A DNA stretch of 64,000 nt from Macrostomum hystrix (taxonomy: Eukaryota > Animalia > Platyhelminthes): positions 868,001 through 932,000 of the forward strand of contig CATNEN010000009.1 in assembly GCA_950097015.1 (NCBI GenBank), read 5' to 3'. A model generated the notes under the pieces. The model searched no databases, was not told the origin of the DNA, and saw nothing but the letters and a program-made list of their open reading frames with translations. This document shows, piece after piece, positions 23,929 through 64,000 of this stretch; positions within the stretch are counted from its first letter, which is position 1; the number at the start of each line of letters is the position of its first letter. The position numbers were made by a program, and so were the translations under genes.

Positions 23929-26900
23929 TCAGCTCCAGGCAGCCGCCACTTCTTCGTCAGCCGGTCGAGCAGTGCTGTGAGGGCCTCCTGGGACCGCGGG
24001 CTGCAGTCTCCGATGGACAGACGCTCGATTGACGACATCGTCGATTTCGTGGAGCTGGAGTTCGCCGGAATCCGGCACTGGGCACTCTAGCATGCAGAAA
24101 TCCGGCAGAATAAGAAACGGATGGAAGTCGAACCTTACGGAGTTGCTGAGTGGCTCGAGGGTGCTGCGGAATCGCAGCAGCAGTTGCGGCAGATCATCGA
24201 TCACCTTTTTCAGAGCATGCGAGGCTGCCACGAACAGCTCCTTAATTCCACCGGACTTTCGCTGCTCACCCTTCAGGTACAGGGCTGCATCGCACAGAAA
24301 GAAATGGTCCATGACGGAGTCTCTTCCAACATGCGGAATGTGATGGTCTTGGCGTGATAGGACTTGAAGCCCTGCACATTGAGGCCGTCCTTGTTTGAGA
24401 TGACCTTCTTCTTCACGAGGTACTTTAGTGTGATAACCAGCTGGCCCGGAAGTGTGCTCAGACTTTGCAGCATCCGCCTCTCCAGGAAGGTGGTGCTCAA
24501 TCGAAGCTGCCTGCCGTCCTGACCGGGAGAAGCTGCGTGCACCGCGTGACACGGCTGCCAGCTCTTGGCGCAGCAACTACAGCAGGCGGTCAGGCATGTT
24601 GGACGTAGCCAGCCCGTCTGGCTGCAGCGGAGCGATGGCGCTGCCGGCTTCAGGGCGCTGCCGCGAAACGGTGTCGCCGGACTAGAGGCTGGAACCGGTA
24701 GGGGGAGTCGATTTTGTCAATTAACAGAAGAAAGACCGCGAAATTTTCCCCCAAGGGAAAGACCACGGGGTATTTCAAATACCCGCTGCCCACTTCACGA
24801 CAACTTCCTAACCACGTGGTGAAAATTCACCATTTGGATCACAATTGTCCGCCCTTTTTAATTATAAAAACCGTCAGAGTCAGCATGGCTGGGATATTCA
24901 GCAATTCTTGTCCAAGACCCTGGTGACAAGGACAGCTGACATTGCTCCGAATTGTTCTAAAAATAATAGCCAATACATGATGAAATTTTATGAGCAGAAA
25001 AATAATCTCTAAGTTTGCCACCAGACACCACGCCTAGAATCGTTGAATATCTCGACGATGCCAATGTTTTGTGATTCTGAAAGTTGTTTCATCGGATAGA
25101 GCGGAAAAATTTCATGGCGATTGGTTGAATATCTCTGGAGATTACAGGAATCAGAATGTGGGCATTTGATGTGGGCAATATAGCCCTGGTCTTTCTACTG
25201 TTAAGGCTGCAGATGTAGAAGGGGCACTTAATTTGCTACTCACCAAATCCTGGAATTGTGCGTGGCCATGGCTGTACTCCTTGAGCTCCGCCTCAACACT
25301 GCACTCGGAATCGCAGACGCCTTTGAGATGGTACAGTCTCCCCGGAATGAGACTCATGATGTCTATATCGGACTCAGAATCTGTCTTGCCGTCCACTGCC
25401 TTCAGGTTGTTACCCCAGCCTTCTGAAACGCTTCCAACGACAAAGGCTTCGCTGGTCTGTGTGCTCACCAGGATGGCCCGCAGGACATCAGCGACTGCGC
25501 TCCGAAGGGCGGTTCTGGAATCCACGAATCCCGATCTATTGAGCGCCCAGTGGAGCAGCTGACTGAGCTGTGGTTCACTAAGACCTTTACTGAAATGAAT
25601 GACAATGATCCAGTGTTGAAATCAAATGCAAGAGGCTGTGGAGAGCGGTGGTTCGAACTTTTTAATAACACGAGTGATAATAATAATTGGTGACATTAGA
25701 CCCGCAGCCAGCGAGGTGGCCATTCTGCCCATTCCGCTGACTCCTAAGCACACGTACACACACTGTACGCACACACACGCTCACACAGGTGTGTACATTG
25801 CCCCTGACTTTCTCATCGTCAGTGTACACTCTCACACACAGTGCCTTGGAGGTTGACCCTCAAGGGTGTAAATTGCACGACAAGCCCCCAAGCATTGTTT
25901 CCGCAGCTGCGCCTTAAATGAATGTGATGTTGATGGCCGGTGCTCCGTCCTTCTGCCGCAGGTTCAGTTCCGCTTTGGCTTTGATAAGTGAAAGCGCAGC
26001 CTTCCCATGTCCTTGCTGCGTTGCTATATAGAGGGGCGAGCAACCGTCGATTTGTTGAGCATTGACGTCGGCTCCCGCTTTGATGAGCATGTTTACAATG
26101 TGATGGTGACCTTGTTGCGACGCCACGTAAATTGGTGAGCGACCTTCAACTTCTTGAACATCAGCCCCTGCACTTATCAGCAAGCTGGCGATCTGTTCGT
26201 GACCATTCTGGCAAGTGATGTAGTGAGCTGAGGCTGTCATAGCATTGTTGATTAACAACAGCCTGAGCCTTGATAAGTAAATTGACAATTTTTATGGCCA
26301 CTTGCCGATGCGATGAACAGAAGGCGAGAGTCCATGGACATTTTGTTGATTGATGCTGGCTAGAGCTTAAATGAGCAGGCTCACAACTCGATGATGACCG
26401 TGGCGTTCTGTGAGGCAACATAGATGGCCGGGTCTCCATTCGTACTGGGAGCATCAACATTAGCGAGTTCCTAGATCAGCAACTCGGCGATTTGCCAGTG
26501 TCCGTGCTGACAAGATATGTACAGTGGTGACAGAGAGCCGCGCTTTACAAGTTTGACGTCGGTCTGCGATTTAATGAGCAGTTCAACAACTGAAGTGGGC
26601 CCGTTTTCGCAAGCCGTGTAGAGAGGCGACACTTAATTCTGTTTGGGAAGATTCGGGTCAGCTCGGGCTCTGATGAGCAAGCGTGCAACTGCTGGATGAC
26701 CATTTTGAGAGGCTATGTATAGGGCTGTAGCGAGCAAAAGGCGACATGACGTCCCGCCTGAGAGGCGATGAGCAGAGTTGACGAGTCATCCTTGTCTCGA
26801 AGATTTACATAGGCGTGCGACTCGATTAGCAGCTCCAGCGTTGGCTGATGGCCCGCATCGGCGGCAGCATGAAGGGCTGAGTGGCCGTGCTTTTCTTGCA

Positions 26901-27754
26901 GGCTGACGTCAGTCCGGAAGTCTGTCAGGAGGAGCTGCACTATCCTATGGTGACCACTTGGCACGGCAGTGATCAGTGATGAAACGCCGTTTTTCGTTTG
27001 AATATTGACCCATGGCATCTGCATTCAAAAGTGCTTCCACCACACTTTTGAGTGTGGTGGAAACAACCTGGGTGTGACCGTTCTCAGCGGCAATGTACAG
27101 AGGTGTCATGCCCTCCACCTCCTTGAGGCTCACATCGGCCTGAGCTCTGATAAGTAAATGCACAACATGACGATGACAATTTTCGCAAGCAACATGCAGA
27201 GAAGAACGCAGGTAACAATCGCTTGGATCGGCATCAGCGCGGGCTCTGATAAGCAACTGAACGACCTGAAAGCTGCCTTTCTGAGCTGCAAAGGCCAGTG
27301 GCGAAATCCTGCTGAGTGGCCGAAGGTTTGAGTCGGCTTGCGCTTTCAGTAGAATCTCAGTTGCTCTGGGCTGCCACGTACAGTGGCGTGCAACCTTTCA
27401 CTTCCTTCAGGCTCACATCTGCCTGAGCCTTGACGAGGACATCGATGACCTTGCAGTGACCCTGCTGCGAAGCGATATGAAGGGGCTGAGCGCCGTCCTT
27501 TCTCGGTGTGTTCAATCTGATGAGGGACTCAATCACTTGCTGATGTCCATAGAAGGAGGCCATGAACAGTGGCGAGTACCCAGCCTTGTCTTGGAGATTG
27601 ACATCCGCCTGTGCTTCGAGCAGCGAGTCCACCACCTGGCGATGACCCCGCTAAGCAGCTAGGTGAAGCGGCGAACGTCCGTTAGCTTCCTGCAGATCGA
27701 TCTTCGCCCGTGCTTTGATGAGCGAATGTGCAGCGGCGACATTCCGTTGCTCAT
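23929..27754 (-). pseudogene. Decayed ankyrin-repeat + Mab-21/cGAS-like nucleotidyltransferase (cGLR) gene
   Basis: Ankyrin repeats over 25900-27754 (GRSPLHLAA*RGH, GYSPLFMASFYGH, GMTPLYIAAENGH, GRSPIYVASQQGH) with an in-frame stop (~27652), deletions and frameshifts. NTase exon ~25151-25590: LLHWALNRSGF..VVGSVSEGWG..DSESDIDIM. Mab-21 C-lobe 24273-24600: HAASPG..LRLSTTFLE..LKYL..FKSYHAKTITFRMLEETP, frameshifted; HFFL in the next frame. A SINE B insertion sits at ~25680-25925. Confidence 0.8.
25676..25925 (-). mobile_element. SINE family B copy inside the ANK-cGLR locus
   Basis: (ATT)n tail; CCCTGACTTTCTCATCGTCAG hairpin; GTGCCTTGGAGGTTGACCCTCAAGGG shared with 4571-4805. Confidence 0.8.
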
Positions 27755-36945: not shown

Positions 36946-39900
36946 TCACGGCGAGTTGATGGCCGACACCGGCGGCGGGCCGTTGGCCATCGGGTTGGGC
37001 GCGGCGACGGAGGCGGCCGCAGCCGAAGGAGTCGGGACGCCGCTGGCGACCGAGGAGGCAACAGAGGTGACGGCCGCGGAGGCGGCACCTGGCAGCGGCA
37101 TCGGCGGCGGCAGCCGGAAGCCGGGCACGCAGGAGCGGGCCACGGACTCCAGGAGCCTGCGAGGCGGCAGAGTGAAGGACGAAGCGGATTGCGAAATTGA
37201 AATAAACTTTTAAATAATCGAAGATAAATATTTACTGCGCGATATCATAATACGTGCAAGACAAGGAATAGAAGGCCCCAGGACAGTGAGAAGGATAGAA
37301 CTCAGGACAATGAGAAGGGTTGGACTCAGGAGAGGGAGAAGGATTGGACTCAGGACAATGAGAAGGATTGGACTCAGGACAGGGAAATCTGCAAAAAACA
37401 GGAAATCTCAAAGTCACAGTGCAACACCCACGCAGCTGCTTAAACTTCGGCCTTTCGATGTCAATCAGATTATGAAGGATGAGGATTAAAAAACCTGACA
37501 GCCGTGGAAGGGGATCGCACCAGATCCCGCGTGAATAATGACAGCATGTCCTTGCTGAGGTAGGGTGTGGCAAGATGTCACTACCGAGCTAAAGGATTAG
37601 GTGGATGGGAAAGTGGAGTAGCTATTTAAGCGCTCTCAGGTAATCCAGTTAGGATTCCCACTCAGAGTCCGCTCGCTTCAAGGAGTTGTCAAAGGAAAGC
37701 CGAGTCTCAGTTCTTTTGCGCAGGCACGCTTCCAAGACGTCGGTCGGGCTGGCGCAGGGGGGAGGTTCTCACAATTGTGTGGCGCATGAGACGATGACCA
37801 AGCAGGTTAATTAATCCGCGGAAGCCAATTAGCAGCAGCAGCTGACCTAGGAACTAATTTTAGAGTACAAGCTAGGACAAATGGATAAACGAGGGTCCAT
37901 CTAGACAAAAAGGCTGCATGGCTGAGCGCATTGCACCAGCCGCCCACCTACTCGCATGTGCTCAGAAATACCCTTGGAGCACATTGGAGCAGAATTCGTG
38001 GCAAATATGCAACAGGCGCCATCTTCCCAATTACTGCCGCCATTCCCGAGGCTATTATCCGAGTAGAAAGCTGAAAAAACACTGATGGGATTTCAGGGGA
38101 TCCCACCTGACCGACGAGCCATGGCTAGCGTAGAAAATAGCTTACGAGCTACACGGCTAAGCGGCCACCAACTTGGCAACAATGCCAGCTCAAACTTATT
38201 AGAGATGGCGGGCTGAGGCGAAAAGCAGACAGGCCTCAGCAGATGAAATGCAGCAACAAAAAACCCCAGCTCGCACAATTTCCTGCCGCTGAGCACATTG
38301 AATAGCAATATTAGCAATATTTACAGTTTTGTGGTTAATTGCTCACAGGGGACAGTATAAACAATGCAGGCCACCGAAATTGCTGCTCAACATTATAATA
38401 AAGCAAGCTGAGCCCGTCACCCGTCAGCTGCCGGATTCCAGACAGCTGGGATCGAAGTTATCCCCAGTTTATTATCCCATTGTCATGGACCTGGGATATG
38501 GGATGTGACGGCAATCTCGTAGTCTCGAGAATCAAGGCGATAATTAGAAGCTAGCGAACACAAATATCTAGTCACATGCGACCTTAATTAACCCATAACA
38601 TTGACAGCTAACACAGATGAGCAATTTAGACTCACTTTTCAATGTGCGGCGAGCAGCGCACGAACTCGTGATCCCAGAACCGGTAACTGGGATTCTTCAG
38701 CAGCTCCGTGAAGGTCAGCAGCAGGCCCCAAGGATGCGGCCGGTTTACAATCAGGCGCTCCAGCAGCACCCTGCAAAGATGGCGGACAGGTGGAGAAGGA
38801 CACTGAACTTAGTTGCGCCCAGATACGTAGCCGTCATTTACATACGGTTAATCACAGGTTTTGAGTACACCAAACCAATGACAGTTTATCCCTGTCTCTG
38901 AGTACACCAATTCAATGACAGTTTATCCCTGTCTCTGAGTACACCAATTCAATGACAGTTTATCCCTGTCTCTGAGTACACAAATTCAATGACAGTTTAT
39001 CCCTGTCTCTGAGTACACAAATTCAATGACAGTTTATCCCTGTCTCTGAGTACACAAATTCAATGACAGTTTATCCCTGTCTCTGAGTACACCAATTCAA
39101 TGACAGTTTATCCCTGTCTCTGAGTACACCAATTCAATGACAGTTTATCCCAGTCTCTGAGTACACAAATTCAATGACAGTTTATAACAGTCTCTGAGTA
39201 CACCAATTCAATGATAGTTTATCCCTGTCTCTGAGTACACCAATTTAATGACAGTTTATCCCTGTCTCTGAGTACACAAATTCAATGACAGTTTATAACA
39301 GTCTCTGAGTACACCAATTCAATGACAGTTTATCCCTGTCTCTGAGTACACAAATTCAATGACAGTTTATAACAGTCTCTGAGTACACCAATTCAATGAC
39401 AGTTTATCCCTGTCTCTGAGTACACAAATTCAATGACAGTTTATAACAGTCTCTGAGTACACCAATTCAATGACAGTTTATCCCAGTCTCTAAGTACACA
39501 AATCTCATGAAAATTAGCCTTAGGCCTTACCTGGTGATCTGCTCCTTGATCTGCTCATTGTTGCTTTCGCGGAAGAAGAAGAGCAAGATTTGGTTAAAGT
39601 AGAAGGTGTGCGAGTTCGGATAGCGCAGCTGGTTGGCCATGGCGTTGAGCAGGAGGTAGCGGCCCTCAGTGCAGCAGAGCATGACCAGAGCCTGCAGAGT
39701 CTCAGTCTCAACGCAGTGAGTCATGTTGTAGGGCTGCAGCGAGTTGCCGCTCTCGTTGATGCGTTTGACAGCCCGCCGGCCGACGTACAGCACCAGGGCG
39801 TTGGTCAGCTCGATGTGGTAGCGCCGGCCCTCCTCGCCGTCATCAGCCCGGATGCGGCTCTGCACATCGGTGAGGAACTGCACCGGCTTGCGGGTGGCCA

Positions 39901-42900
39901 GATAGCCGTCCACTTCCTCGCGCAGCTTGGCGGGGATGTTGGTCTCCAGGCCAGCGAAGGAGCCGCGCGGCTCCACCTGCATCTCCGGCAGGGCGAGGCA
40001 CTGCGAGGCCGGGCTCTGGATGGGGTCCAGCAGCTGGACGAACTTCGGGAAGGCCGACAGAATGAGATTGCGCAGCTGGATGCAGTTGGCAGGGATCACG
40101 TCGCACAGGGCATGGTGGTACTCGCTGATAAAGTCGGGAAAGTCGTGCAGCAGCACCAGGATGAGGCGCAGGGTGCCGCGGTACAGCAGGTGCACAGTCT
40201 TGATAAAGTTGGCGCTGGCCAAGAAGGGCGCAATGAACTTCAGCAAGTCAACCAGCAGCTGGGCGTACATGGACCAGGCGGCCGGAGTGCTCAGGTATTT
40301 GGACAGTACGGACCGGTGCGAGATGCACTCCACCTGTGTGCGGTCAGAGTAACATTTAGTCAGCGAAGCTGAAGCTGAAGGACTCAAGCTGTCTGAGAAA
40401 TGTTTAAAAAATCTGACTCGAATGACAGAGCTTGCGGAGCTGCTAATTGCTGTGTTTGGGCATTGCTTAGGGAGCCATAATTTGCAGGTAAAAGTGTGGG
40501 CCCACAATGTACCCAATCAGGGATTCCCAACTCGATCGTCAGCCCACAGGGTACAAAATAAATCTGAGATTTCAAACTCAATCGTGATCCCAAAAGCACC
40601 TAAACCGGTGATTCTCCAGCTACTCACCCAGCTGTAGGTGAAGGATGGCGCCTTGGCGGGTCGCACAATGTGCAGCGCATTGGCGAAGGCTGCCAGCATG
40701 GGTACAGTCAGTGAGGCCAGAGCGCTGGTCTGAGGACTGTCGGCATCGGCGGGCCCCGGGCAGAGCAGCTCGCTGAACAGCAGGACGAAGATGCGCTGGA
40801 ACGGCATGGGATGGAATCGGTCGGACCGGATGTCCTGCTCCTGCAGCAGCGTGCCGGAGATGATGCCGAGGATCTTGTTCAGCAGGTTTATCTTTGTGCT
40901 GGCGTTGAACTCGCGCTCCCGCTGAGTGTCGGAGGCAGCAGCGGCGGCGGCCTGCTCTCCGCTGTGCTTCACCATCACGGCAATCAGGCGGATGTAAGCG
41001 TCCAGTTCTTGGTAGCAGCTGACGCGGTTGCTGAGCACCTCTTGGCCGGACTTAAGCAGGGCACGGAAGCAGTGCTCCATCACATAGTCAGTTGTAAGGC
41101 GGAAGAATCTGAGGATTAGATTAAAGCGGCTTTGCTTTAATTATGCGTTATGCTATGCGATCTTAAAAGTGCAATACAATGGGAGTGCTTGAATGATGCA
41201 TGAAGGCTTTGAGATGAACCTGTGAGCAATGATCCAGCAAGTCTCACCTGGTGATGATATCGTCAGTCTTCAGGATGCCAAACTGCGTCATCTCCTTGAC
41301 GAAAGTATTGAACCCACGCTGATCCACCACCCGCTGGGCATTGTACAAGAGGTACCATCTCTTCATGAGGCTCTCGCTGGCCTCCTGCAGCCAGTGGGGA
41401 TCGTCAAACTCCCTGGCCTGCGAGCAGCCGCTGTACAGGTAAGTGGTGGCGGGCTGCTGATGGGCCTCAAGCAGGCCAAAGTCCAACAGGCCGCGCACCT
41501 GGTGGCAGACGCGGACAAACTCAGGTGGCACGTGGCCAGCCGGTGATTTCTCGATGAGATGGGTGAGCACGGCAATTGTGCCAGTGAGGTCGCATTCGTT
41601 GAGCACAGTCTGCTCGCGACTATCGCTGAGCACCAGGGCGTGGAACAGGTCCATGACGAAGCGGAGTGCGCGCAGGTTGCTCTGGCGAATCTGCTTGGCA
41701 AGGTGAGAGTCCACAGCCTGCAGGCTGACGATGTGAATCTTCAGCAGCTCAATGAAGGCGTCGCTGTTCCACTTGTGCGGCTCAGGCATGTCAGTCCAGA
41801 TCTGAGTGACCACGTGACTCATGCAGCTGGAGTAGCCCAGGCCGCTGAGTTTGGGCTGGTACATAAGCCGCAGCACCACAGTGTGCGCCTCCTTGTAGCG
41901 CTCCAGCACCTCCTGTGGAAAGTGCGCCTGCATCGCCTGCCGGCGAAACGTCTGGAACAGCGACTGGACTGCCGCCTTTACAACATCGCTGGCGCAGGCG
42001 TCATTAGCGGTAGCCTTGGCAACCTGAGCGCGCTCAACTAGCACGCGAAGGCGCTGCACGAGCTGGCCGCTGTCGCCGATGCCGGAGCCAGCGGCAGCAG
42101 CAGCCGTTGAAGTCGGCGGCTGGGCCACGCTGGGCGAGTTGGCGATGTACTGTGACTGGCGCTCGACTTCGGCCACGATGGTGTCAAAAAGCTGCGCAAC
42201 CTCGTTGCGGTGCTGCGGCTGGGGCGCGGCCTGCGCCGTCGGCTGCGGCTGTGGCTGGGCCGGCTGCTGCGCGGTCATCGGAGGCATTGGCGGCGGCACG
42301 GCTGGAGGAGCATCGCTAGCAAAGCCGGGCACGCAGTTGGCGTACTCGGAGTAAACAGCCAGGCTGACCAGAGAAGGCGGGCCAACAGACTTGCGCAGCA
42401 TTGGCGGCATGGAATCATTCTGGTAGGCCATCTGCTGCGGGTCAAAGTAGCGCCTGCCTTCCTGGCGGGCCTGGATGCGGAGCCGGTAATCATTCTCTAG
42501 AGTGACATCTACCTGGATTAGGGCCTTTTCAACGCACATTTTCTGGATGTATGCCGTGCCCAGCTCGAAATTCTCGCTGGCGATGACACGGGCGGCCTCC
42601 TCGATCATCTCCCTCTGCTGGTTGTTGGGCGAGTTGAGCACCTGCAAGAACTGCTGCTTGAGCTTGGTCTCCATGTTGATGCTGAGGGCCTCACGGCAGG
42701 TGATAAGGGCCATTCCGGCGGTGAGGCAGCGGGTCATGTTGTGAGCGGCGGTGCGCAGGTGCCCCTCGTCGTCGTCAAGTGCGAAGTCCTTGCGCACGAC
42801 GCCCTCCACGGTGCCGAGGACGATGCGGACGCAGCGCTGGGACACGGGCTCGAGCAGCTCGCCGACTGTGACCTCCAGGGTCTGGCGGATGGGGGCAGCA

Positions 42901-45900
42901 AGCCCAGGGTGAGTCTGCAGCAGCAGCAGGGCCGGATTCACAGTGAAGAAGGCGCTGAGAGGCCGGCTGGTGTCGATGTCGGTCCACTTGAAGCGCGGCA
43001 TAGGATGCATGCCGCCCTGCTGGTGAATGAGCTGCATGGCAGATGGATCAATGTGCATCGGCGGTGGCAGCTGCTGCTGCTGCAGCGATGGTTGCTGCGG
43101 CGGCGGTAACGGCTGTGATGGCTCGAACTCTTCAGCCGGAGCGGTCATTCTGGGCGGCAGCTGCTGGTCGTGCTCAGCAACGGCGGTTGTGGTGGCAGCT
43201 AAGCCGCGGGCGCCGACAGTAGTGCCGCGAATGAGGCAGTTCTCAACTTCAATCTGGCGAATCCGGTCGCTGTCGCGCAGGTAATAGGCCGGTTCCAGCT
43301 GGTCGAAGTTAACGTCAAGCTTTCTGCATAGAATTTCAACTTCGAATTTCAGCGAGTTCTTCACCGCCTTGTCCATGTGCAACTCTTTGAGTACGCGCAC
43401 AATGCCCATGGTCCAGGGGCTGGGCGGCCTGAACACAGGGCTGGCTGAGCAGGCCTCCAAGGTGCGCGCAACAAACGGCACAGCATAGTGCATTTCCACT
43501 TGGCCCTTGCAGTAGGCCTCAAGCAGCAGGCCCTTCAGGTCCATATCGTCGTACAGGATGGGCCGGTTCTTGGCGAGGGTCAGCAGGCCCAGGAAGTGGC
43601 CGATGTTCTTCAGCAGCGATCGGTCATTATAGTCGTTGAGATCCGGGCGCATGTTCTGAAGCAGGGCTCGGATGCTGCGGAATGTCTGCTGCAGTACTAT
43701 CTCACGCAGGCGAGGTACATTCAGCGCGTCCATGAGGTCTACGAACAGCTGGTGGTAGTTGGGCTCTGTGGTGACCCGCTTCATGACCAAGTACTGGCCA
43801 AGCCAGGGCATGAACTCATCAGGCACAGCCCGGCGCAGCTCCTCGGACTTGGAGCCTAAGTTCAGCTTGCTCAGGTTGTTGAAGATGAAAAACACAGCGT
43901 CCTGCACGCTCTCTGGCGGCGTGGCCGCCTCCTCAATGATATCGCCGTCGCCAGCTCGGCGAATCTGGGATTCGGTATCGCCGCCTGGCAGAGATCTGGC
44001 GGCCAGCTGGATGCCAATCTGCAGATCCTTGGGAAACTTGGCAAAGTTGTTGCAGGCCAGCAGATGGGCCGCAACCTGGCGATAGTTGGCCAGGCTGGTC
44101 TTGCACCTGCGGAGATCAGGTGATGGCAGCTCCACAATTGTTAATTAGCCCGCAGAGTTAAAAGAATTTAGAGATAGATTTTCGGAGCAGCGAGGAGCCT
44201 TTTTTCCTGATCTCTTCGGGAATAATAAAGTTAACAGATTGTGGATTATGGAGGCTGCGAAAACGTTTGTCCCAGATAGCCCTCTCCCGCATACTACTAA
44301 AAGTTCACGAGCATACAGACTTAGTCATCCTGTGGATCATAGCAACAGGCTGTACTGTGGGTCATAGCAATACCCAGATGTAGTCATTTTGTGAGTCATT
44401 GTTAAATCCGTATTTGGTCATTCTATGAGTCAATTTTACTCCATGATTAGGTAATTCTGCGAGTCATGGTAACTCCAAATTTGGTCAAGATTCTAATTAA
44501 GAAGTTGTTACAGCTCATTAAACTTATAACTGTGTGGGTCATTGAAACACCCATCCCGTGGTTCCTAGCCATGGTTTTTAGTTTCTAGCCCTAGCCTAGA
44601 CAAAGGTACAGTCGTCAAAAGTGAAGGTTTTGCATACAAACCGTTTAGTGAAAAAATCCCACGACTGATCCCTGACTAAAAAGCTTTAGAAACACACCTT
44701 AGGAGGATGTCCACGCCAAAGTTGAAGAATGTCTGGTCGGCCTCTGTCTCGATGGGCCGGGTGACGCACAGGCTGAGCAGGCGAAGGAAGAAGGCCAGCA
44801 CCTGATGCGATGTGAGCTGAAAGCCCAGGGCGATCACCTGGCCGAACAACTCGGCCATGATGGCGCGCTGCTTAGGCGGGAAGCTGGTAGGTATGTGGTT
44901 GAACTCGTCAACCAGCACGCGAAGGAAATAGTTGCATAGCGGCTTCTCCTTGGGTTCTCGCAGCATGAGGAACACCTCCTCAGAGGTGATGGTGCCGCTG
45001 AACAGGCTCTTCATCATCATGTTGATGCGCTCGTCCAGCTCCGGAGGACTTGGCGCTGTCAGCTCTGACGGCAGACCGGCGTTAGCCGAGAATCTGCCAG
45101 CAGGCATCGGCGGCTGCATTCCTGACTGATGATGATGCAGCGACATCGGCATCGGCGGCTGCGATGCCTGCGGCGGTGGGAGGCCGAGCCCAGCGGGCGA
45201 GCCCATGGGAATAGCCGGCAACGGGATCTTGTGCTTCGGTGTGGCCAGGCCAGGCTGTTGCTGCTGCTGTGGTACAAAGCTGGGCAGCTGGCCAGCTAGA
45301 CTCTGCTTCATCATGGCGGAGGCTGGCGACATCTGAAGGCCTGCGGGTATTTTGGGCGCGGATGCTTGGGTTTAGAAGCGAATTGAGGTGGATGTTGGGA
45401 AGCCTATGGAGTTAATGACAAGCAATCCAATCTTGCACAAAACTACTATCAGTAGCCACTATCGCCACTGCACACTCACTAGCCAACTGCGAGCTGATGC
45501 TGGGTATCGGGCCGAGCATTGCGGCTGCTGTGGTCGCCTTGGCAAACTGAGGCTGCTGCTGCTGCTGAGGTGGCGGAGGCGCCGGTGGAGGCTGTGGCGC
45601 CTGCTGCTGCGGCAGGTCCCTGGTGATTTGGACGTATCTGGCAAAGCTGAGCTTCATGCCAGCCAGCTCGGCTACAGTCTCGGGCGACAATCCGCCGCCG
45701 GGCACGGACGCGTGCCGCCGCTCCAGGCACTGAAGGATAATCTTGATGAAGACGACGTCAACCTGAGCCGCTCGGAGCTGATCGGCCGGGTCTTCTTTGC
45801 CAACCATGCGGCCGGCCCGGGTAGCAAGGAACTTAAGCGCGGCCTGGGCGAACTGGTCGCCATACTCAACCAGCCGGTCAGTCAGCCATGCGTCCAGCTT

Positions 45901-48900
45901 GATGATTTCCCGCTTGGCTGCCAGGCATGCCAGGCTCAGGCTGAACAGGTGATTGTGCGACTTCAGGACCCAGGCGAGTGTGTCCATTCCCGGGTTGCTA
46001 GGCAGGGTGCCAATAACAACGTCTAGGGCGCGATTAGCTCGGTATCCCTCGCCCAGGACGCCTTCGCCGTCGGAGACCCAGTCGACCAGGGCGTGCATGA
46101 TGATTGGCTTCACTTGCATGTAGTTCCACGCATAGCTTAGCACCTGGCAACGGTTGGGGTGGCGTCAGAGATTGCACAGCAACCAGCATAGAAACGTTAA
46201 GATAAATTTACGTTTCCGTTAAAAGATAAATAAGGCCTCAATCTGAGGATCTTGGAGATTTGGGGAAAGGCCACAATCTGAGGATCTTGGAGAGTTGGGG
46301 AAAGGCCACAATCTGAGGATCTTGGAGAGTTGGGGAAAGGCCACAATCTGAGGATCTTGGAGAGTTGGGGAAAGGCCACAATCTGAGGATCTGAATAATA
46401 TATTTAGGGAAAGACACCATCCTTAAGGATTGTTGGAGTGAGGATATAGTATGAGCACTAGAGTTTCAAGCTTGACAAGGATCTGTGGGAATTTGCAGTA
46501 ACATACTGATAAGGAGTTTGATAATTAACCGAAAATGACCAGTATGACTTACAAAAGCGACGCTAGAATGGTTGGACAGCAGAATGCAGATGAGGCAGTG
46601 CAGTAGCTCTTGCTTTAGAATGCCCATAGACTCGTGGGCTTGCAGCAGGCACATCATAAGCAGATCTGGACAGGCCTTCACTGGATAATCGAAGAGTTCT
46701 CGGACCTCAGTGTAGAAGCCCTGCTCAGCCAGATTCATCAGTGCGTCGATGAGGTCGAGGTTGCGCCAAGTCTGGGCGCCGCGCAGGTCGTCCTCAGGCG
46801 TCGCAACCTTCAGCCGACCAACGTCAGCCTGTCTGCAGCGGAAGTAGGCCAAGCAGAAGATATCCGGGTGGTTTATGCAATAGCGCAGGAAGGACAGCTG
46901 ACCCTGGGCGTTGCTCCAGAGCCGGTAGAAGGTCTCGATCGGCAGGTCGCTGCTGGGGCCCTGGCCGCCATTGGCTAGGAACTTGCGCAGCAGCTCAAAG
47001 GCTCGCTTGGATTTCACCTGAGACAGTAAGATGAGTTGGGGATAAACTTTCTGCCAATCAGAACTTAAATTAATTATGCTTACAGACCAGCGAACTGTTT
47101 TGGATTACACTGCCTGGAGATCTACATGGTAACTCAAGCAAGAATGCAATATTGCAATGCAATCGCAGCCAGCAGCTCACCTCAAAGCCTGGGTGGTCCA
47201 GCTCGGGTACCACACTGCGAAACTGCAGGCCAGGATTGAGCTCTCGCACAGCCACCAGGAAATGTTCAACATTCCAGGAGTCCGCCGGCTGCTCCAGTTT
47301 CCAGCTAGCGGAGCTGGAGGCGCCGGGACCGTGCAGGGCGATCTGGTCACTGGCACCGCCCTCGCAGGTGCGCATGAACATGGAGATGCAGCGCGCCACC
47401 GCGGCTGGGGTGATGTCGCGCACGCCGAACTCCGTGAGAGTCTGCCGCATCTCGTCCAGCGTGGCAGTGCAGCCGTAGCCCAGCTCTTCTAGCAGCTCAG
47501 CCAGGCTGCTGTCAACCTGCTGACTGGACTGCAGCGCCGAGTTTGAGCTCACGACCATCTGCTGAAGGCTGGTTGGCTCGCGGAAGGCCTTGGACATCGG
47601 CAAGTCTTCGGTCTCGGCGTACAGTAGAGGCGCCAGGACCACTGGTACTCTCTGCTTGGGGAAGTCTTTGCGCAGCACGCGAAGGAAGGCTTCGATGAGG
47701 TCCTGGCTGGCGCCAAACCTATGCGGCTCCTCACGCAGCTTGGTGAGGATGAGGTGCACCATTTCGATGCTCATGTCTTGCAGGCCGGCGACACCGCCTC
47801 CGCCGCCAACGCCGCCGACACCGTCGTGACCACCCGCGCCAGCATCGGCGTCAACGTAGGTGGCCAGGAGGTCGGGGAGCTTGGACCGGAGCCAGGCCTG
47901 GGCGCCTTCGCGCGTCTCAATGCGCAGGGAGGACAGCAAAGCCAGGCCGAGTGTGACTTCTTGCACCCGGCTGAGCTTGAGGGTGCGGCTGACCTGCGGC
48001 AGGAGACTTGGGCCGGGCCGAAGGCTCTTCTGAGACGCAAAAGGATGATCGAGCGCATAGCAGATAAGGGTGACGAAGTTGGGCTTAGCAAACAGGCTGT
48101 TCATCTCCTGGATGAGCAGCTGGGTCTGGTGATAGTCTTTTACAGAGCCCCTGGCATCGTGCGGCGCGCCAGAGAAGTCGATGGCTGAGAACAGGCACCT
48201 GTATAGATGACGCTCGGCCTCGAAGCCATGTTGATTGACCAGCTGTTGTGGATTGGGAATGGATGGAGATAAATAAATGCACAATCTGCCTAACATAATA
48301 CTGTCTTTTATGGTTGTTGCTGCCATTTTTGCAATTATACTGAGGATTCCATGTATATATAGGCATTAGTATTTTATTGGACATTTGTTTCTGTGACTTT
48401 TATATAGTTTCAAGAGTAGTATTAGTGTTGATTGATGAGCTGTTTAGTTGTGAAGAAAGTGTAGAAAATACCTCAATAAGATTTTTTAAATAATAAATGC
48501 TATAAAAAGCTTCTAACATCTGATTTATGTGCATAAGTTACTTTAAGGAAATTTAGGAATTCCCATAAGAAATTAAGGCAAATAATTTAACCTAAATTTG
48601 CTCTTTTTAACTCAGACTTTAATCTTGAGACTTTGTGTTGCTACAATATTATCCACAATTTTATAAAAATTAGCTGTTATCACTCTGCTTTTTCTTGATT
48701 CTAACACCATCAAGCATTTTAATCAGCTTAAATCAAACTTCCCAAAGTTCTTTACACTTTAAAGTTCTTTGTCTATCAAATATAAAGCATTTCTCTTTGA
48801 TAAGAGGTTTTTGTAGCTGAACTTGTAAATTTCCTTATTGGCTATATTACCAATGGCTATAGATGAGAAAGACAAGCTGGCACTCTAAATCCATTCTGTT

Positions 48901-60501: not shown

Positions 60502-62316
60502 ATGTCTACATATATTTGTGGCATGTCACCACTGCACAGCGCAGCATTCGATGGACACTTGGAAGTGGTCGGAAAGCTGATCGACTGTGGAGCAGGCATC
60601 GATCACCAGGATATATTTGGCCGGTCACCACTGAACCGCGCAGCTTTCCAGGGACACTTGGGAGTGGTCGGAAAGCTGATCGACTGTGGAGCAAGCATCG
60701 ATCTACAGAATAAAGATGGCTCGTCACCACTGTACAGCGCAGCAGTCAAGGGACACTTGGAAGTGGTCGGAAAGCTGATCGACTGTGGAGCAGGCATCGA
60801 TCTACAGAATATATTTGGCTGGTCACCACTGAACAGCGCAGCTTTCCAGGGACACTTGGAAGTGGTCGGAAAGCTGATCGACTGTGGAGCAGGCATCGAT
60901 CACCAGGATATATTTGGCCGGTCACCACTGAACCGCGCAGCTTTCCAGGGACACTTGGGAGTGGTCGGAAAGCTGATCGACTGTGGAGCAAGCATCGATC
61001 TACAGAATAAAGATGGCTCGTCACCACTGAACAGCGCAGCAGTCAATGGACACTTGGAAGTGGTCGGAAAGCTGATCGACTGTGGAGCAAGCATCGATCT
61101 ACAGGAAAAAGATGGCTGGTCACCACTGAATTGCGCAGCGAAAAAGGGACACTTGGAAGTGGTCGGAAAGCTGATCGACTGTGGAGCAAGCATCGATCTA
61201 CAGAATATATTTGGCTGGTCACCACTGAACAGCGCAGTGAAATATGGACACTTGGAAGTGGTCGGAAAGCTGATCGACTGTGGAGCAAGCATCGATCTAC
61301 AGGATAATGATGGCTGGTCACCACTGAACAGCGCAGTGAAATATGGACACTTGGAAGTGGTCGGAAAGCTGATCGACTGTGGAGCAAGCATCGATCTACA
61401 GAATAAAGGTGGCTGGTCACCACTGAACTGCGCAGCGACAAAAGGACACTTGGAAGTGGTCGGAAAGCTGATCGACTGTGGAGCAAGCATCGATCTACAG
61501 AATAATGATGGCTGGTCACCACTGAACAGAGCAGCTGTTGAGGGACACTTGGAAGTGGTCGGAAAGCTGATCGACCGTGGAGCAAGCATCGATCTACAGA
61601 ATGAAGATGGCTGGTCACCACTGAACTGCGCAGCGACAAAAGGACACTTGGAAGTGGTCGGAAAGCTGATCGACTGTGGAGCAAGCATCGATCTGCAAAA
61701 TAAAGATGGCTGGTCACCACTGAACATCGCAGCGGAAGAGGGACACTTGGAAGTGGTCGGAAAGCTGATCGACTGTGGAGCAAGCATCGATCTGCAAAAT
61801 AAAGATGGCTGGTCACCACTGAACAGCGCAGCTGTCCATGGACACTTGGAAATTGGCAGAAAGCTGATCGAATGTGGAGCAAGCATCAATCTACCGAACA
61901 TCCATGGCTGCCTGGCTATTCATTTTGCCGTTGAATTTGATCACTCTGAGCTTATCCGGTTGCTCATTGTTGCTGGTGCTGACGTCAATCGTAAAAGCAG
62001 TTCTGGCTGGACCCCTCTGCATCTGGCCATCTGGCTGGAGCTGCCGCACATCGCAGTTCAGCTTGTTGAGTCATCTGCTCTAATTTTACCTGATTTGGAC
62101 GCTCTGACGGCCACCGATTTGGCTGTTTTGCGAGGATCGTCCGTCTCGTATTCGCTGTTTAGCAATCAGCAATCGGTGTTGCCCTGTTCCGCATCCGACC
62201 AGCTGCCAAGACACATTTGGCTTCTCTGTTGCTTCGGAAATGCTGACTTTGCAGCAGTTCTGAGCGGTCATGCCGTCGATCCAATGTCGATTGATGCTCG
62301 TGTCGACATCACGTGA
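60502..62316 (+). CDS. Ankyrin-repeat protein with 14 highly similar 33-aa repeats plus 2-3 divergent ones; probably continues into further exon(s)
   Basis: 604-aa ORF with unit SPLNxAxxxGHLEVVGKLIDCGASIDLQxxxGx; the ORF stop lies inside a strong donor AC|GTGAGT at ~62312. Confidence 0.9.
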   Translation: MSTYICGMSPLHSAAFDGHLEVVGKLIDCGAGIDHQDIFGRSPLNRAAFQGHLGVVGKLIDCGASIDLQNKDGSSPLYSAAVKGHLEVVGKLIDCGAGIDLQNIFGWSPLNSAAFQGHLEVVGKLIDCGAGIDHQDIFGRSPLNRAAFQGHLGVVGKLIDCGASIDLQNKDGSSPLNSAAVNGHLEVVGKLIDCGASIDLQEKDGWSPLNCAAKKGHLEVVGKLIDCGASIDLQNIFGWSPLNSAVKYGHLEVVGKLIDCGASIDLQDNDGWSPLNSAVKYGHLEVVGKLIDCGASIDLQNKGGWSPLNCAATKGHLEVVGKLIDCGASIDLQNNDGWSPLNRAAVEGHLEVVGKLIDRGASIDLQNEDGWSPLNCAATKGHLEVVGKLIDCGASIDLQNKDGWSPLNIAAEEGHLEVVGKLIDCGASIDLQNKDGWSPLNSAAVHGHLEIGRKLIECGASINLPNIHGCLAIHFAVEFDHSELIRLLIVAGADVNRKSSSGWTPLHLAIWLELPHIAVQLVESSALILPDLDALTATDLAVLRGSSVSYSLFSNQQSVLPCSASDQLPRHIWLLCCFGNADFAAVLSGHAVDPMSIDARVDIT

Positions 62317-63176
62317 GTAGCGCCTGATGCTTGCTTTTTGTTTTACCAGTGCCACCGCAACTTCCCATTTTGTACCTGGACTTGGTTATACATCGTAATA
62401 TTTTTAAATACTTCTAGGGCAAATACTCGTATCTTTCTCTAAGGGCAGATGTGCATTCCAGTGTAGGTGAGTGCATGCGTAACTTTTCCATGTGTATTTT
62501 TGATTAAAAAAGTTTCTCGTGTAATATGCCTCTCAAATATCTTGGATATACCAGGCAACAGAACTCAAGTAACAGTATAAATACTTGTTTGCTAATTTAC
62601 TTTCTACTATCGGTTTCATTTGGCAACAGGTCCGATAATCTTGACATGCAGCAGATTGGAATGCAGTTTATTCTTGTTGCTGACACACAGGTAAATGATT
62701 CTGACCCCACTTAATTATTTTCTCGCCAGCATCTAGCTTCGATCTTTGAAAGTCTTTGGAATTCCGTTTGAGCCATTCCGTCTGTGCATTTATTTTTTAA
62801 GCGGTCTTAAAAGTGATGTGATTGTTCTTGTAGACCACTGTACTCGATGTGCACACCAGGCTCTATGTGACATTCGTAGCTGGCACTCATTTGGAAGCGG
62901 ATAAATGCGACAGCGTTCCAGGAAACTCAAACTTAAACGGGCTTCACTTGAGGAAGGCGCAACAGGGTGCAGGGCAGCTGGCAACATCCGCATGAGATTG
63001 TGCTGGTTGGCTGAGTGGAAATCGTCCTGTAGGTCTGCAGATCAGTTGGAATTGCTTTAACTACAATTTAGATAAAAGGAGACGCGGATGCTGTGGTCCT
63101 TCTCACGATCAAGCGCATGCTGTCTGTTCTTGTGGTCTCGATTGTTCCAATCAAACTGATTCATCTGCTGGGCAGA

Positions 63177-63540
63177 ATGAAAATTGACAAGAACTATGAC
63201 AAGGAGGAACTCAATCGAATTAAGCGGGGATCTGGACTTTTCCCAGCAGGCCACTATCCGTGGAAAGAACGCCCAGACAATGGTCTTGCTGATATAATTG
63301 CACAGGGTGCTCGGATCTTTAAAGTTATTAGTGATAGCAAAGACAATATTAAGAACGTAGCAGAATCAGTTGGCAGTGTTGTTACTGCGGCTAAAAAGAT
63401 AAAGGATTCTGTAACTGAATGAAAAACACTCCCAGAGATTCAACCACTTGCTCCAAATCCAGACAGTGTGGATCTGCAATCTATGAGAAGATACGAGTAA
63501 GAGCTAGTTTAAAAAGGAAAGTGGTTTTAAATTTGACTAG
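63177..63540 (+). pseudogene. Small Polinton/Maverick-type ORF (KRGSGL motif, near-KGSGFKF end), with stop and frameshift
   Basis: MKIDKNYDKEELNRIKRGSGLF..., read-through segment after TGA 63422, and AAAGGAAAGTGGTTTTAAATTTGACTAG one base off KGSGFKFD*. Lies immediately upstream of the packaging ATPase. Confidence 0.5.
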
Positions 63541-63659
63541 AGGGTACTTTCCGAGGGTACAAGACTAGTCCCAGAATGACAAATAAAGTCCCGGAATGAC
63601 ACCTCTTGACCTCTTGACGAGATTCTAAATTAATTTTTTAATTTTTTCCTGGGTGAAAA

Positions 63660-64000
63660 ATGGACATCAATCTTCACTGGACGCGTAATCAGCTTAAAGT
63701 TTTCTCATAATGAGTCAATCCCGAGTCACTTCAGATGCATTGTTGTTGGAACATCTGGCAGTGGAAAGACATTCAGAGTATTTGATATGCTTCTGAGACC
63801 TGGATTCCTAGACTATGACACTCTGCAAATCTACTCTCCCACACAGTGTCAAGATGAGTGTCAAGATGAGTGTCAAGATGAGTGTCAAGCTGAGTGTCAA
63901 GATGAGTGTCAAGATGAGTATCAAGATGAGTATCAAGATGAGTATCAAGATGAGTATCAAGATGAGTGTCAAGCTGAGTGTCAAGATGAGTGTCAAGATG
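63660..64000 (+). mobile_element. Polinton/Maverick (adintovirus-like) A32/FtsK-type packaging ATPase, 5' part, frameshifted near its start
   Basis: MDINLHWTRNQLK then, after a +1 shift, FSHNESIPSHFRCIVVGTSGSGKTFRVFDMLLRPGFLDYDTLQIYSPT. Walker A GxSGSGKT plus LLRPGxLDYD is characteristic of Polinton ATPases. Confidence 0.8.
63843..64000 (+). repeat. 12-bp tandem repeat T(G/A)TCAAGATGAG in frame with the viral ATPase (CQDE/YQDE)
   Basis: Direct read; runs to the window end. Confidence 0.95.

What the first reader, a model, noticed from the sequence alone, without database searches (positions are those of the whole stretch)
60526..61911. Natural DARPin-like ankyrin array: frozen framework, variable binding face
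Fourteen 99-bp repeats are nearly identical at the DNA level in the framework (GHLEVVGKLIDCGASIDLQ). Variation is concentrated in the beta-turn (IF/KD/ND/KG/ED, then R/S/W) and first helix (S/R/C/I; FQ, VK, VN, KK, KY, TK, VE, EE, VH). These are essentially the positions randomised in designed ankyrin repeat proteins (established). Turn and helix variants recur in different combinations, and repeats 1-2 recur as 4-5, implying shuffling by unequal crossover or conversion. This parallels high-internal-conservation repeats in fungal NLRs and suggests a diversifying recognition receptor (inference).
Basis: partly seen in the sequence, partly recalled or inferred. Interest (0 to 1): 0.78.

Follow-up and report, generated by a model that had tools for sequence, protein, structure and literature searches.

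The report
Hypervariable ankyrin array on a cGAS-like receptor
The near-identical ankyrin repeats are real, and they form the front part of an expressed flatworm cGAS-like innate-immune enzyme gene; they vary almost only at the residues that ankyrin proteins use to grip targets, so they look like a fast-evolving recognition module.

Summary
Observation confirmed. Window 60525-61898 is a 99-bp tandem array (13.9 copies, 89% match, no indels) inside one open exon, 60502-62312, that Pfam calls ankyrin.

New here: transcript contigs from three runs splice this exon (GT at 62313) across a 3,896-nt intron to an exon at window-equivalent 66209. That exon carries a nucleotidyltransferase core, and a Mab-21_C exon follows. 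The array is therefore the N-terminal half of a roughly 1,240-aa ankyrin-cGLR (cGAS-like receptor).

- **Where variation sits:** the five most variable codons are DARPin positions 13, 14, 3, 2 and 5. The six DARPin-randomised codons hold 62-66% of nonsynonymous differences (p <= 2e-4).
- **Selection signal:** four-fold sites next to these codons are almost invariant. Omega at these codons is about 2.8-7, depending on the count used.
- **Shuffling:** the four-gamete test and recombined helix/turn variants show that units are shuffled.
- **Relatives:** a paralogue 220 kb away has about 20 units. The Macrostomum lignano relatives carry 27 and 72 units, which the public gene model omits.
- **Family size:** this genome has at least 91 cGLR-like loci, and half of those sampled have ankyrin repeats just upstream.

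Ankyrin-cGLR fusions were catalogued in 2023, and this scan has already reported such genes elsewhere in this genome. The shuffled, hypervariable array is the new aspect. Ligand, enzyme product and downstream receptor are unknown, and no STING was detected.

The parts
60502..62312 (+). Exon 1 of the ankyrin-cGLR gene ('copy A'). It holds an ATG at 60502 just after an AG, the ankyrin array, two degenerate repeats and a linker, and ends in phase 2.
   Evidence: ORF. Pfam Ank. Transcript contigs of runs X2, X3 and X5 end here and join to window-equivalent 66209. The four exon lengths sum to 3,723 nt, in frame.
60526..61812 (+). Thirteen homogeneous 99-bp (33-aa) ankyrin units. Mean identity between units is 89.2% at the nucleotide level and 80.6% at the protein level.
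61813..61911 (+). Fourteenth unit, a hybrid. Its first half is of the array type and its second half of the terminal type (…LEIGRKLIECGASINLP…).
   Evidence: It differs at 13 of 99 nt from the terminal unit of the paralogue, whose unit 21 is the reciprocal hybrid.
61912..62109 (+). Two degenerate C-terminal ankyrin repeats, cap-like. They are conserved in the paralogue and in M. lignano PAA71625.1.
62110..62312 (+). Non-repeat linker that leads to the cGLR domain.
   Evidence: Colinear with M. lignano P0271.
62313..64000 (+). First 1,688 nt of intron 1, with a GTGAGT donor at 62313. The intron runs to window-equivalent 66208 (AG) and holds mobile-element-like ORF fragments and a 12-bp minisatellite.
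   Evidence: GT..AG joint that skips 3,896 nt in three RNA-like runs with zero depth across the intron. ORFs. TRF.

Best explanation
**What it is.** The array is the N-terminal sensing arm of an expressed ankyrin-cGLR gene in a Macrostomum flatworm.

**Shown:**
- Exon 1 (13 near-identical ankyrin units, one hybrid unit, two cap-like repeats and a linker) is spliced to exons that encode a cGAS-like nucleotidyltransferase.
- That enzyme part keeps its GS motif and all three acidic residues, and is followed by a Mab-21 C-terminal helical domain and a family-specific tail. The whole product is about 1,240 aa.
- Units are reshuffled by unequal crossover or gene conversion, within the array and with a paralogue 220 kb away.
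- Unit number differs widely between copies and species: about 14 and 20 here, 27 and 72 in M. lignano.
- Amino-acid change is concentrated at the beta-hairpin tip (positions 1-3 and 5) and the inner helix (10, 13, 14). Neighbouring synonymous sites stay homogeneous.

**Inferred:**
- These residues line the concave groove of an ankyrin solenoid and bind a non-self ligand, probably a protein.
- Binding relieves inhibition of the cGLR domain or clusters it, and the domain then makes a cyclic nucleotide signal.
- Repeat shuffling plus diversifying selection supplies new specificities in the germ line, as in fungal NLRs with highly conserved repeats.
- The receptor for the signal is unknown.
For: **Gene structure**
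- Array and ORF.
- Splice 62312 to 66209 (GT..AG) in three runs that have no intron depth. A 93-nt contig specific to the unit 1/2 junction of copy A shows that this copy is transcribed.
- Exon 2 holds GS…DSDMDV and exon 3 holds SVDQVKA.
- Colinear with M. lignano PAA71625.1 across the junctions. CDS is in frame.

**cGLR identity**
- Pfam Mab-21_C, 33.5 bits against a cut-off of 24.1.
- A family profile hits cGAS at 5e-7 and cGLR1 at 1e-5 in the PDB.
- The AF2 model of the 72%-identical M. lignano enzyme part (pLDDT 84.5) matches Sp-cGLR1, cGAS and Cv-cGLR1 best (probability 1.0).

**Surface-focused variation**
- The six DARPin codons hold 62%, 66%, 45% and 43% of nonsynonymous differences in the four arrays of two species (p 2e-4 to 3e-3).
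- dN(hv)/dS(framework) is 7.2, 5.2, 1.6 and 2.1.
- Event counts give omega about 2.8-2.9, p 0.002-0.01, in this genome.
- In A+B, diversity (pi) is 0.33 at the first and second positions of hv codons. At four-fold sites of conserved codons interleaved with them it is 0-0.12, codon 12 excepted.

**Shuffling:**

**Family context**
- At least 91 cGLR-like loci. ANK lies just upstream in 14 of 28 sampled.
- Li et al. 2023 treat cGLRs as pattern-recognition receptors and list ANK-cGLR fusions, M. lignano ones included (PMC9980059).
- Fungal ANK repeats with high internal conservation show positive selection on the concave face (PMC4986451).
Against: - No ligand, enzymatic product or infection response is known.
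- Within the six hv codons alone, NG86 dN/dS is only about 0.9, because these codons also differ at third positions. The four-fold site of codon 12 is as variable as the hv codons. Old variant cassettes that escape conversion could explain part of the pattern.
- Event-count omega in the M. lignano arrays is 1.3 and not significant.
- Copy A lacks the divergent N-terminal ankyrin region seen in M. lignano, and homology to the paralogue starts inside the array, so it may be a 5'-truncated duplicate.
- The active-site motif departs from the strict consensus: I instead of Q/T before GS, and Q after the third Asp.
- No STING ligand-binding domain scored above the Pfam cut-off in this genome.
- The single-sequence AF2 model of the array was poor (pLDDT 44.5). 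Placing the hv residues on the concave face therefore rests on alignment to the ankyrin/DARPin consensus, not on a model.
Confidence: 0.55

Rival explanations
1. Neutral concerted evolution. The array is a young, repeatedly homogenised tandem duplication. The fold tolerates change only at exposed positions, and divergent codon clusters resist gene conversion. Variation then piles up there without any selection for diversity or any recognition role; the ankyrin arm is just a scaffold or regulatory spacer.
For: - dN/dS inside the hv codons is about 0.9-1.0.
- Codon 12's synonymous site co-varies with the position 13/14 variants.
- Framework omega is 0.4-0.6, i.e. ordinary constraint.
- The M. 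lignano event-count omega is not significantly above 1.
Against: - Four-fold sites of codons 4, 6, 7, 8 and 11, which are interleaved with the hv codons, are nearly invariant (pi 0-0.12). The first and second positions of the hv codons have pi 0.19-0.65. Escape of whole segments from conversion does not predict this codon-by-codon contrast.
- dN at the hv codons is 5-7 times the framework dS.
- Event-count omega is 2.8-2.9 with p <= 0.01.
- The same positions are hot in four arrays of two species.
Confidence: 0.25
2. Copy A is a 5'-truncated segmental duplicate on its way to decay. It is transcribed and spliced but has no function of its own, and its pattern is inherited from the functional ancestor or from the paralogue.
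For: - Homology to paralogue B begins inside the array at about 60505-60519, with nothing shared upstream.
- There is no N-terminal cap region like that of M. lignano. The only specific homologues of that region in this genome (C7, C11) carry stop codons.
- A decayed ANK-cGLR lies in the same window.
Against: - All four exons are open and in frame (3,723 nt) with the catalytic residues kept.
- Exon 3 is 97% identical in protein to the paralogue, without stops.
- A-specific contigs and the spliced junction are present in three RNA-like runs of two studies.
- An ATG directly follows an AG at 60501/60502.
Confidence: 0.1
3. The array is a diversifying module, but its target is not a pathogen. It could track a fast-evolving self partner (for example in reproduction, a field where Macrostomum is a model) or mobile elements, and the Mab-21 domain may act without making a nucleotide signal.
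For: - MAB21L1-type relatives have non-immune roles (PMC9980059).
- No STING was found.
- The strict active-site motif is not fully matched.
- An earlier agent found a family member here that lacks one acidic residue.
Against: - All three acidic residues and GS are kept in this copy.
- Profile and fold matches rank cGAS and cGLRs above MAB21L1.
- M. lignano members were accepted into the curated cGLR set.
Confidence: 0.08
4. Assembly artefact: a collapsed or expanded repeat that does not exist as written.
For: Short-read contigs cannot span the array, so unit number and order were not verified independently.
Against: - The array sits in a 1.79-Mb contig of a 42-contig assembly.
- It has no indels and keeps an open frame.
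- Unit-junction contigs match exactly in four runs of two studies.
- Homologous arrays exist at a second locus and in an independent M. lignano assembly.
Confidence: 0.02

Closest known systems
Ankyrin-cGLR fusion proteins catalogued by Li et al. 2023 (PMC9980059: Fig. 1C, Table S2; Stylophora pistillata ANK-cGLRs; M. lignano PAA entries)
   Same: Same architecture: ankyrin repeats N-terminal to a cGAS-like nucleotidyltransferase with Mab-21 C-terminal domain. Same flatworm family: the closest public proteins are all M. lignano, and M. lignano accessions with Ank_2 appear in their domain table.
   Different: - The held text of that paper and its supplements (some files were cut when stored) does not mention near-identical units, hypervariable positions, unit shuffling or 14-72-unit copy-number differences.
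- The public M. lignano model of the nearest relative (PAA71625.1, 847 aa) omits the 27- and 72-unit arrays altogether.
- There are no biochemical data for this subfamily.
Fungal NLRs with highly internally conserved ANK/TPR/WD repeats (Dyrka et al. 2014, PMC4986451; Paoletti et al. 2007 as cited there)
   Same: Tandem repeats that are nearly identical at the DNA level, differences in repeat number, exchange of repeats within and between paralogues, and hypervariable, positively selected positions on the concave binding face (beta-hairpin and inner helix).
   Different: - There is no NOD (NACHT/NB-ARC) domain.
- The repeat arm is N-terminal and the signalling domain is a cGLR.
- The host is an animal; such repeats were found in only about 0.8% of metazoan repeat proteins.
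- Mean protein identity between units is 80.6%, just under their 85% criterion.
Designed ankyrin repeat proteins (DARPins; consensus framework with positions 2, 3, 5, 13, 14 and 33 randomised. The scheme is established knowledge recalled from memory, not taken from a tool)
   Same: A fixed consensus-like framework, with the five most variable natural positions equal to five of the six library positions. Strong sequence matches to solved DARPin chains.
   Different: - This array is natural and germ-line encoded.
- Position 33 is invariant, while 1, 10 and 32 (and 9 and 18) also vary.
- It has 13-72 internal repeats instead of 2-3.
- No N-cap was recognised in this copy.
cGAS, Drosophila cGLR1 and Sp-cGLR1 (single-domain cGLRs)
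   Same: The catalytic fold and acidic triad. These are the best structural matches for the orthologue's enzyme part.
   Different: Those enzymes sense nucleic acid on the surface of the enzyme domain itself. Here a large, separately evolving repeat arm and a C-terminal extension of about 250 aa are appended.

Membership tests
Ankyrin repeat proteins (Pfam PF00023 / PF12796) | 33-residue repeats that score above the Pfam gathering thresholds | tested here: met
   Ank_2 476.8 bits (cut-off 27.3) and Ank 340.3 bits (cut-off 21.1), with 15 stretches. Matches to ankyrin-1 and DARPin chains in the PDB at E 1e-105 to 1e-30.
Ankyrin repeat proteins (Pfam PF00023 / PF12796) | Helix-turn-helix plus beta-hairpin solenoid fold | tested here: inconclusive
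   The single-sequence AF2 model is poor (mean pLDDT 44.5). It does show two helices per 33 residues throughout.
cGAS-like receptors (criteria of Li et al. 2023, PMC9980059) | Active-site motif h[QT]GS-X8-20-[DE]h[DE]h-X50-90-h[DE]h | tested here: met
   Exon 2 holds …IGS-X20-DMDV. After about 57 residues, exon 3 holds VDQ. GS and all three acidic residues are present. There are two departures at flanking positions: I for Q/T, and Q for a hydrophobic residue. M. lignano relatives have VDF or VDI.
cGAS-like receptors (criteria of Li et al. 2023, PMC9980059) | Homology across the NTase core and the C-terminal helix bundle | tested here: met
   Pfam Mab-21_C E 4.7e-8, 33.5 bits against 24.1. A family profile hits cGAS at 5.4e-7, cGLR1 (8gjy) at 1e-5 and MAB21L1 at only 0.034. 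A single-sequence phmmer search against the PDB found nothing.
cGAS-like receptors (criteria of Li et al. 2023, PMC9980059) | Predicted structural homology to known cGLR / CD-NTase enzymes | tested here: met
   Tested on the 72%-identical M. lignano protein P0121, not on the window's own spliced product. AF2 pLDDT 84.5, pTM 0.85. Foldseek's top hits are Sp-cGLR1, cGAS and Cv-cGLR1, probability 1.0, TM by target 0.43-0.54.
cGAS-like receptors (criteria of Li et al. 2023, PMC9980059) | Ligand-activated synthesis of a nucleotide second messenger | not testable with these tools
   Needs recombinant protein and a nucleotide product assay.
cGLR-STING pathway | A STING cyclic-dinucleotide-binding domain encoded in the same genome | tested here: not met
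   The best six-frame match to PF15009 scores 25.6 bits, below the 27-bit cut-off. That ORF gives no Pfam family when scanned whole. A divergent or intron-split STING cannot be excluded.
Repeat domains with high internal conservation (fungal NLR type, Dyrka et al. 2014) | Over 85% identity between repeats across at least 100 aa | tested here: inconclusive
   Mean pairwise identity of units 1-13 is 80.6% in protein and 89.2% in DNA. 15% of pairs reach 85%, and adjacent units 8-13 are 82-91% identical.
Repeat domains with high internal conservation (fungal NLR type, Dyrka et al. 2014) | Variable positions on the binding face with dN above dS, plus repeat shuffling and number variation | tested here: met
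   (omega above 1 at a-priori surface codons; significant in this genome's arrays). (four-gamete test). Unit counts of about 14, 20, 27 and 72. Variation between alleles was not tested.
NLR / STAND receptors | A central NACHT or NB-ARC NOD domain | tested here: not met
   Pfam scans of exon 1, exon 2 and the exon-3 ORF find only Ank and Mab-21_C. The four exons leave no room for a NOD.

The most novel reading that the evidence does not exclude
Macrostomum flatworms may run a germ-line-diversifying receptor repertoire built on cGLRs. Dozens of ankyrin-cGLR genes would use arrays of near-identical, continually reshuffled repeats (up to 72 units), with positively selected groove residues, to bind pathogen or mobile-element proteins directly. 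Binding would switch on nucleotide-second-messenger synthesis, read by a receptor other than canonical STING. This would be an animal counterpart of fungal high-internal-conservation NLRs, and it would extend cGLR sensing from nucleic acids to proteins.
Probability: 0.3. Interest if true: 0.85.

Novelty: new variant of a known kind. Interest (0 to 1): 0.62.

Why it matters
cGLRs are now seen as a major animal family of pattern-recognition receptors, yet most have no known ligand, and the few solved cases sense nucleic acids on the enzyme domain itself.

An appended, hypervariable and reshuffling ankyrin arm suggests a second way to give a cGLR specificity, and it makes that idea directly testable. 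The candidate contact residues are known, natural variants are plentiful, and copies with 14 to 72 units can be compared.

It also shows the fungal 'highly conserved repeat' mode of receptor diversification in an animal, joined to a different signalling domain.

On the practical side, public gene models of M. lignano omit arrays of up to 72 repeats, so this family's repeat content is under-annotated there. Flatworms, usually described as lacking cGLR signalling, include a lineage with about a hundred such loci.

Tried and rejected
- **Word-index protein search** with the tail of the paralogue's 908-aa exon. It returned only generic ankyrin proteins (best 39-47% identity) and none with a Mab-21 domain, so it was uninformative.
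- **Single-sequence phmmer** of the exon-3 product against PDB sequences. No hit at E <= 1. A family profile was needed.
- **AF2 of the 603-aa ankyrin exon without an alignment**. Mean pLDDT was 44.5, too poor to measure solvent exposure, so the hv positions could not be mapped on a model.
- **Plain NG86 dN/dS inside the six hv codons**. It gave about 0.9. I rejected it as a test because only about 2.5 synonymous sites (18 minus the 15.6 N-sites) are involved and multi-step codon paths inflate pS. I used framework and interleaved four-fold sites as the neutral reference instead, and I report both results.
- **STING**. Nothing scored above the cut-off.
- **M. lignano-type N-terminal ankyrin region near copies A and B**. 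Only generic ankyrin similarity was found. The specific homologues at C7 and C11 carry stops.
- **10-kb upstream flanks of 20 paralogues**. The ANK census therefore rests on 1.5-kb flanks.
- **'Transmembrane' N-terminus of the paralogue's ORF**. Probably a pyrimidine-rich tract ahead of a splice acceptor, not coding sequence. Left open.
- **A>T difference at window 61011** seen in all runs. It most likely comes from k-mers of other units or the paralogue, so I do not count it as a polymorphism.
- **Assembly artefact.** Rejected; see the rival explanations.
Full report
**1. The observation.** Tandem Repeats Finder reports one array at 60525-61898: period 99, 13.9 copies, 89% matches, no indels. 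It lies in a single ORF, 60502-62316 on the + strand, which Pfam scores as ankyrin (Ank_2 E 3e-146). Sliced at 60526, the array has 13 homogeneous 33-aa units. A 14th unit is a hybrid whose second half is of a different, terminal type. Two degenerate repeats and a linker of about 68 aa follow. Units 1-13 are on average 89.2% identical in DNA and 80.6% in protein.

**2. Where the variation sits.** I numbered positions as in the DARPin consensus (G = 4, TPLH = 6-9, GH = 15-16; that scheme is established knowledge recalled from memory).
- For the 32 homogeneous units of this array and its paralogue, the most variable codons are 13, 14, 3, 2 and 5, followed by 32, 10, 1, 9 and 18.
- The six positions randomised in DARPin libraries (2, 3, 5, 13, 14, 33), chosen beforehand, hold 63.5% of all pairwise nonsynonymous differences. 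A permutation over columns gives p 6e-5.
- Position 33 never varies.
- Codons 15-31 are almost frozen, synonymous sites included. Diversity (pi) at seven four-fold sites is 0.000 in array A and 0.017 in A+B.

**3. What the exon belongs to.** The ORF ends at a GTGAGT donor (62313).
- I laid contigs of four public runs on window 60450-66449. Three of the runs behave as RNA, with depth on exon 1, zero depth over about 3 kb, then depth again. Each holds an 856-nt contig that joins window 62312 to 66209, skipping 3,896 nt with GT..AG ends.
- The frame runs on into a segment with …IGSFADGW…DADSDMDV….
- After a 608-nt intron comes an exon of about 470 codons that Pfam calls Mab-21_C (33.5 bits, cut-off 24.1). 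It carries SVDQVKA at the place of the third catalytic Asp.
- A short last exon follows.
- All junctions are colinear with M. lignano PAA71625.1. The four exon lengths sum to 3,723 nt, a multiple of three.
Each exon was searched by reference. The enzyme fold was tested on P0121, the unaltered, 72%-identical M. lignano protein that begins at the exon-2 equivalent.
- A profile of 26 family members hits cGAS (5e-7) and cGLR1 (1e-5) ahead of MAB21L1 (0.034) among PDB sequences.
- The AF2 model of P0121 (pLDDT 84.5, pTM 0.85) matches Sp-cGLR1, cGAS and Cv-cGLR1 best (probability 1.0).
- A 93-nt contig over the unit 1/2 junction (…DHQDIFGR…), a combination absent from the paralogue, is present without mismatch in all three RNA-like runs. 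Copy A itself is therefore transcribed.

**4. Relatives.**
- *Paralogue B.* A paralogue lies 220 kb away on the same contig, inverted. Its 908-aa exon has about 20 homogeneous units plus two terminal-type units, then the same two cap-like repeats and linker as copy A. Its cGLR exon is 97% identical in protein. Outside the arrays the two loci are 94.5-96% identical, introns included. Homology begins inside the array, so copy A has no shared 5' region.
- *Unit relationships.* Units of A and B are intermixed (for example A6 and B18 differ at 2 nt, A10 and B17 at 3) without colinearity. The terminal units are reciprocal hybrids.
- *Family size.* Genome-wide, the exon-3 protein finds at least 91 loci: 178 candidates, of which 90 were scored. 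Of 28 sampled loci, 14 have ankyrin repeats in the 1.5 kb upstream on the same strand. In some, ANK and the NTase core share one ORF. Several cGLR loci sit beside ankyrin ORFs of 1,100-2,700 aa.
- *Other species.* The closest public proteins are all from Macrostomum lignano, at 72% identity at best. With its 220-Mb size, the window's genome is therefore another Macrostomum species, in line with earlier notes of this scan.
- *M. lignano arrays.* The M. lignano contig that carries PAA71625.1 holds two tandem copies. Their exon-1 equivalents are ORFs of 2,916 and 1,420 aa, containing 71.6 and 26.7 copies of a 99-bp unit with the same framework (…KLIDCGASIDLQ…). The deposited 847-aa model starts after the arrays.

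**5. Is the diversity more than relaxed constraint?**
- *Pairwise counts.* Pairwise NG86 counts were made in four arrays (A, B, M. lignano 1 and 2). The six a-priori codons hold 62%, 66%, 45% and 43% of nonsynonymous differences (p 2e-4, 3e-5, 2e-4, 3e-3). Their dN is 7.2, 5.2, 1.6 and 2.1 times the dS of the other 27 codons. Framework dN/dS is 0.4-0.9.
- *Event counts.* Counting distinct variants on minimum spanning trees, with the path of fewest nonsynonymous steps, gives omega about 2.8-2.9 at these codons in this genome (binomial p 0.002-0.01). In M. lignano it gives 1.3 (p 0.12-0.15).
- *The caveat.* dN/dS computed inside the six codons alone is about 0.9. Those codons also differ at third positions, and the synonymous site of codon 12 co-varies with positions 13/14. 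Old variant cassettes that resist conversion would give the same numbers.
- *Against the caveat.* The four-fold sites of codons 4, 6, 7, 8 and 11, which are interleaved with the hv codons, have pi of 0-0.12. The first and second positions of the hv codons have pi of 0.19-0.65. The contrast is therefore codon by codon, not segment by segment.
- *My reading.* This is moderate evidence for diversifying selection, replicated in direction in two species. It is not proof, because unit pairs are not independent and recombination rules out tree-based tests.

**6. Shuffling.**
- 45% of 300 pairs of informative sites within the 99-nt unit show all four gametes.
- Eight of nine recurring helix variants occur with two or more different downstream turns.
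- Unit 2 equals unit 5, and a 180-nt exact run recurs at a three-unit offset.
- Unit counts of about 14, 20, 27 and 72 and the hybrid end units fit unequal exchange.

**7. Comparison with what is known.**
- Li et al. 2023 (PMC9980059) define cGLRs as pattern-recognition receptors. They state that 87% are single-domain, that some carry TPR or ankyrin modules, and that 'most platyhelminthes' lack cGLRs. Their tables include M. lignano proteins, some with Ank_2. The architecture and this flatworm family were therefore already catalogued, and earlier agents of this scan reached the same verdict for two other ANK-cGLR genes of this genome.
- What I did not find described is the array of near-identical units with surface hypervariability, shuffling and extreme differences in unit number. 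I checked that paper's held text and supplements (some files were cut when stored) and five full-text searches.
- This evolutionary mode is known from fungal NLRs. There, ANK, TPR and WD repeats with high internal conservation show positive selection on the concave face. Such repeats were rare in metazoans, at about 0.8% (PMC4986451).
- The gene has no NOD domain, so it is not an NLR. It works like one only in how its repeat arm evolves.

**8. Open points.**
- The 5' end of copy A: its own ATG at 60502 follows an AG, and a spliced leader is possible. The apparent hydrophobic N-terminus of copy B looks like a pyrimidine tract before an acceptor.
- No STING domain scored above the cut-off, so the downstream receptor is unknown.
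- The AF2 model of the array itself failed.
- Allelic and somatic variation could not be examined, because only contigs were available and the single read-laying run was used for the splice.

**9. Verdict.** The gene is a new variant of a known kind: an ankyrin-cGLR whose ankyrin arm evolves like the repeat arm of fungal high-internal-conservation NLRs. Interest is 0.62.

Noticed in passing
L044:1880-10627 and L044:42034-46293 (M. lignano NIVC01001151.1): Two tandem ANK-cGLR copies have open exon-1 ORFs of 2,916 and 1,420 aa, holding about 72 and 27 near-identical ankyrin units. The public model PAA71625.1 (847 aa, gene span 38.5 kb) starts after the arrays and seems to bridge both copies, so the arrays are unannotated.
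   Followed up: partly
window 23929-27754 (-): A decayed ANK-cGLR. Ankyrin ORF fragments lie at 25917-27650, the exon-2 equivalent at 25262-25570 (36% identity), and only residues 55-250 of the exon-3 equivalent at 24022-24551.
   Followed up: partly
window 39527-48326 (-): A CNOT1 (CCR4-NOT scaffold) gene in large exons. Pfam finds CNOT1_1st, TTP_bind, CAF1_bind, DUF3819, the connector and Not1.
   Followed up: partly
window 63634-64000 and on to window-equivalent 65012 (L007:1-1012), inside intron 1: ORF fragments that resemble a P-loop DNA-packaging-type ATPase and the C-terminal part of a retroelement integrase, interrupted by a 12-bp minisatellite (63845-64107). They are also present in the paralogue's intron. 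I observed them only and did not analyse them further.
   Followed up: no
consensus units of this genome versus M. lignano: Framework codons 22-33 are 35/36 nt identical between the two species' consensus units, and codons 4-9 are 18/18 identical. The catalytic exon of the same gene has dS 0.56 (79% nt identity). The framework DNA may be conserved beyond what the protein requires, but the sample is small (roughly p 0.04).
   Followed up: partly
G000:C10:3058510-3062748 (L016) and G000:C33:5293221-5297459 (L017): Two ANK-cGLR loci on different contigs give identical scores and identical ANK-NTase ORF sequence. They are either a very recent duplication or uncollapsed haplotigs.
   Followed up: no
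L038, L039, L041 (upstream flanks of other cGLR paralogues on C3): Other subfamilies also show runs of three to five very similar ankyrin units (for example …ADVNLQRNTG.SPLYIASQ.GH…). Internal repeat conservation is therefore not confined to copies A and B.
   Followed up: no
window-equivalent 66210 (L012:5761): Runs X2 and X3 read G where the assembly and run X5 read A, at the second base of exon 2 (Lys/Glu). This is probably a strain or allelic difference.
   Followed up: no
window-equivalent 68794-69206 (L007:4794-5206): A 28-bp minisatellite starts at the stop codon of the cGLR gene. It is much longer (about 2.3 kb) downstream of the paralogue.
   Followed up: no
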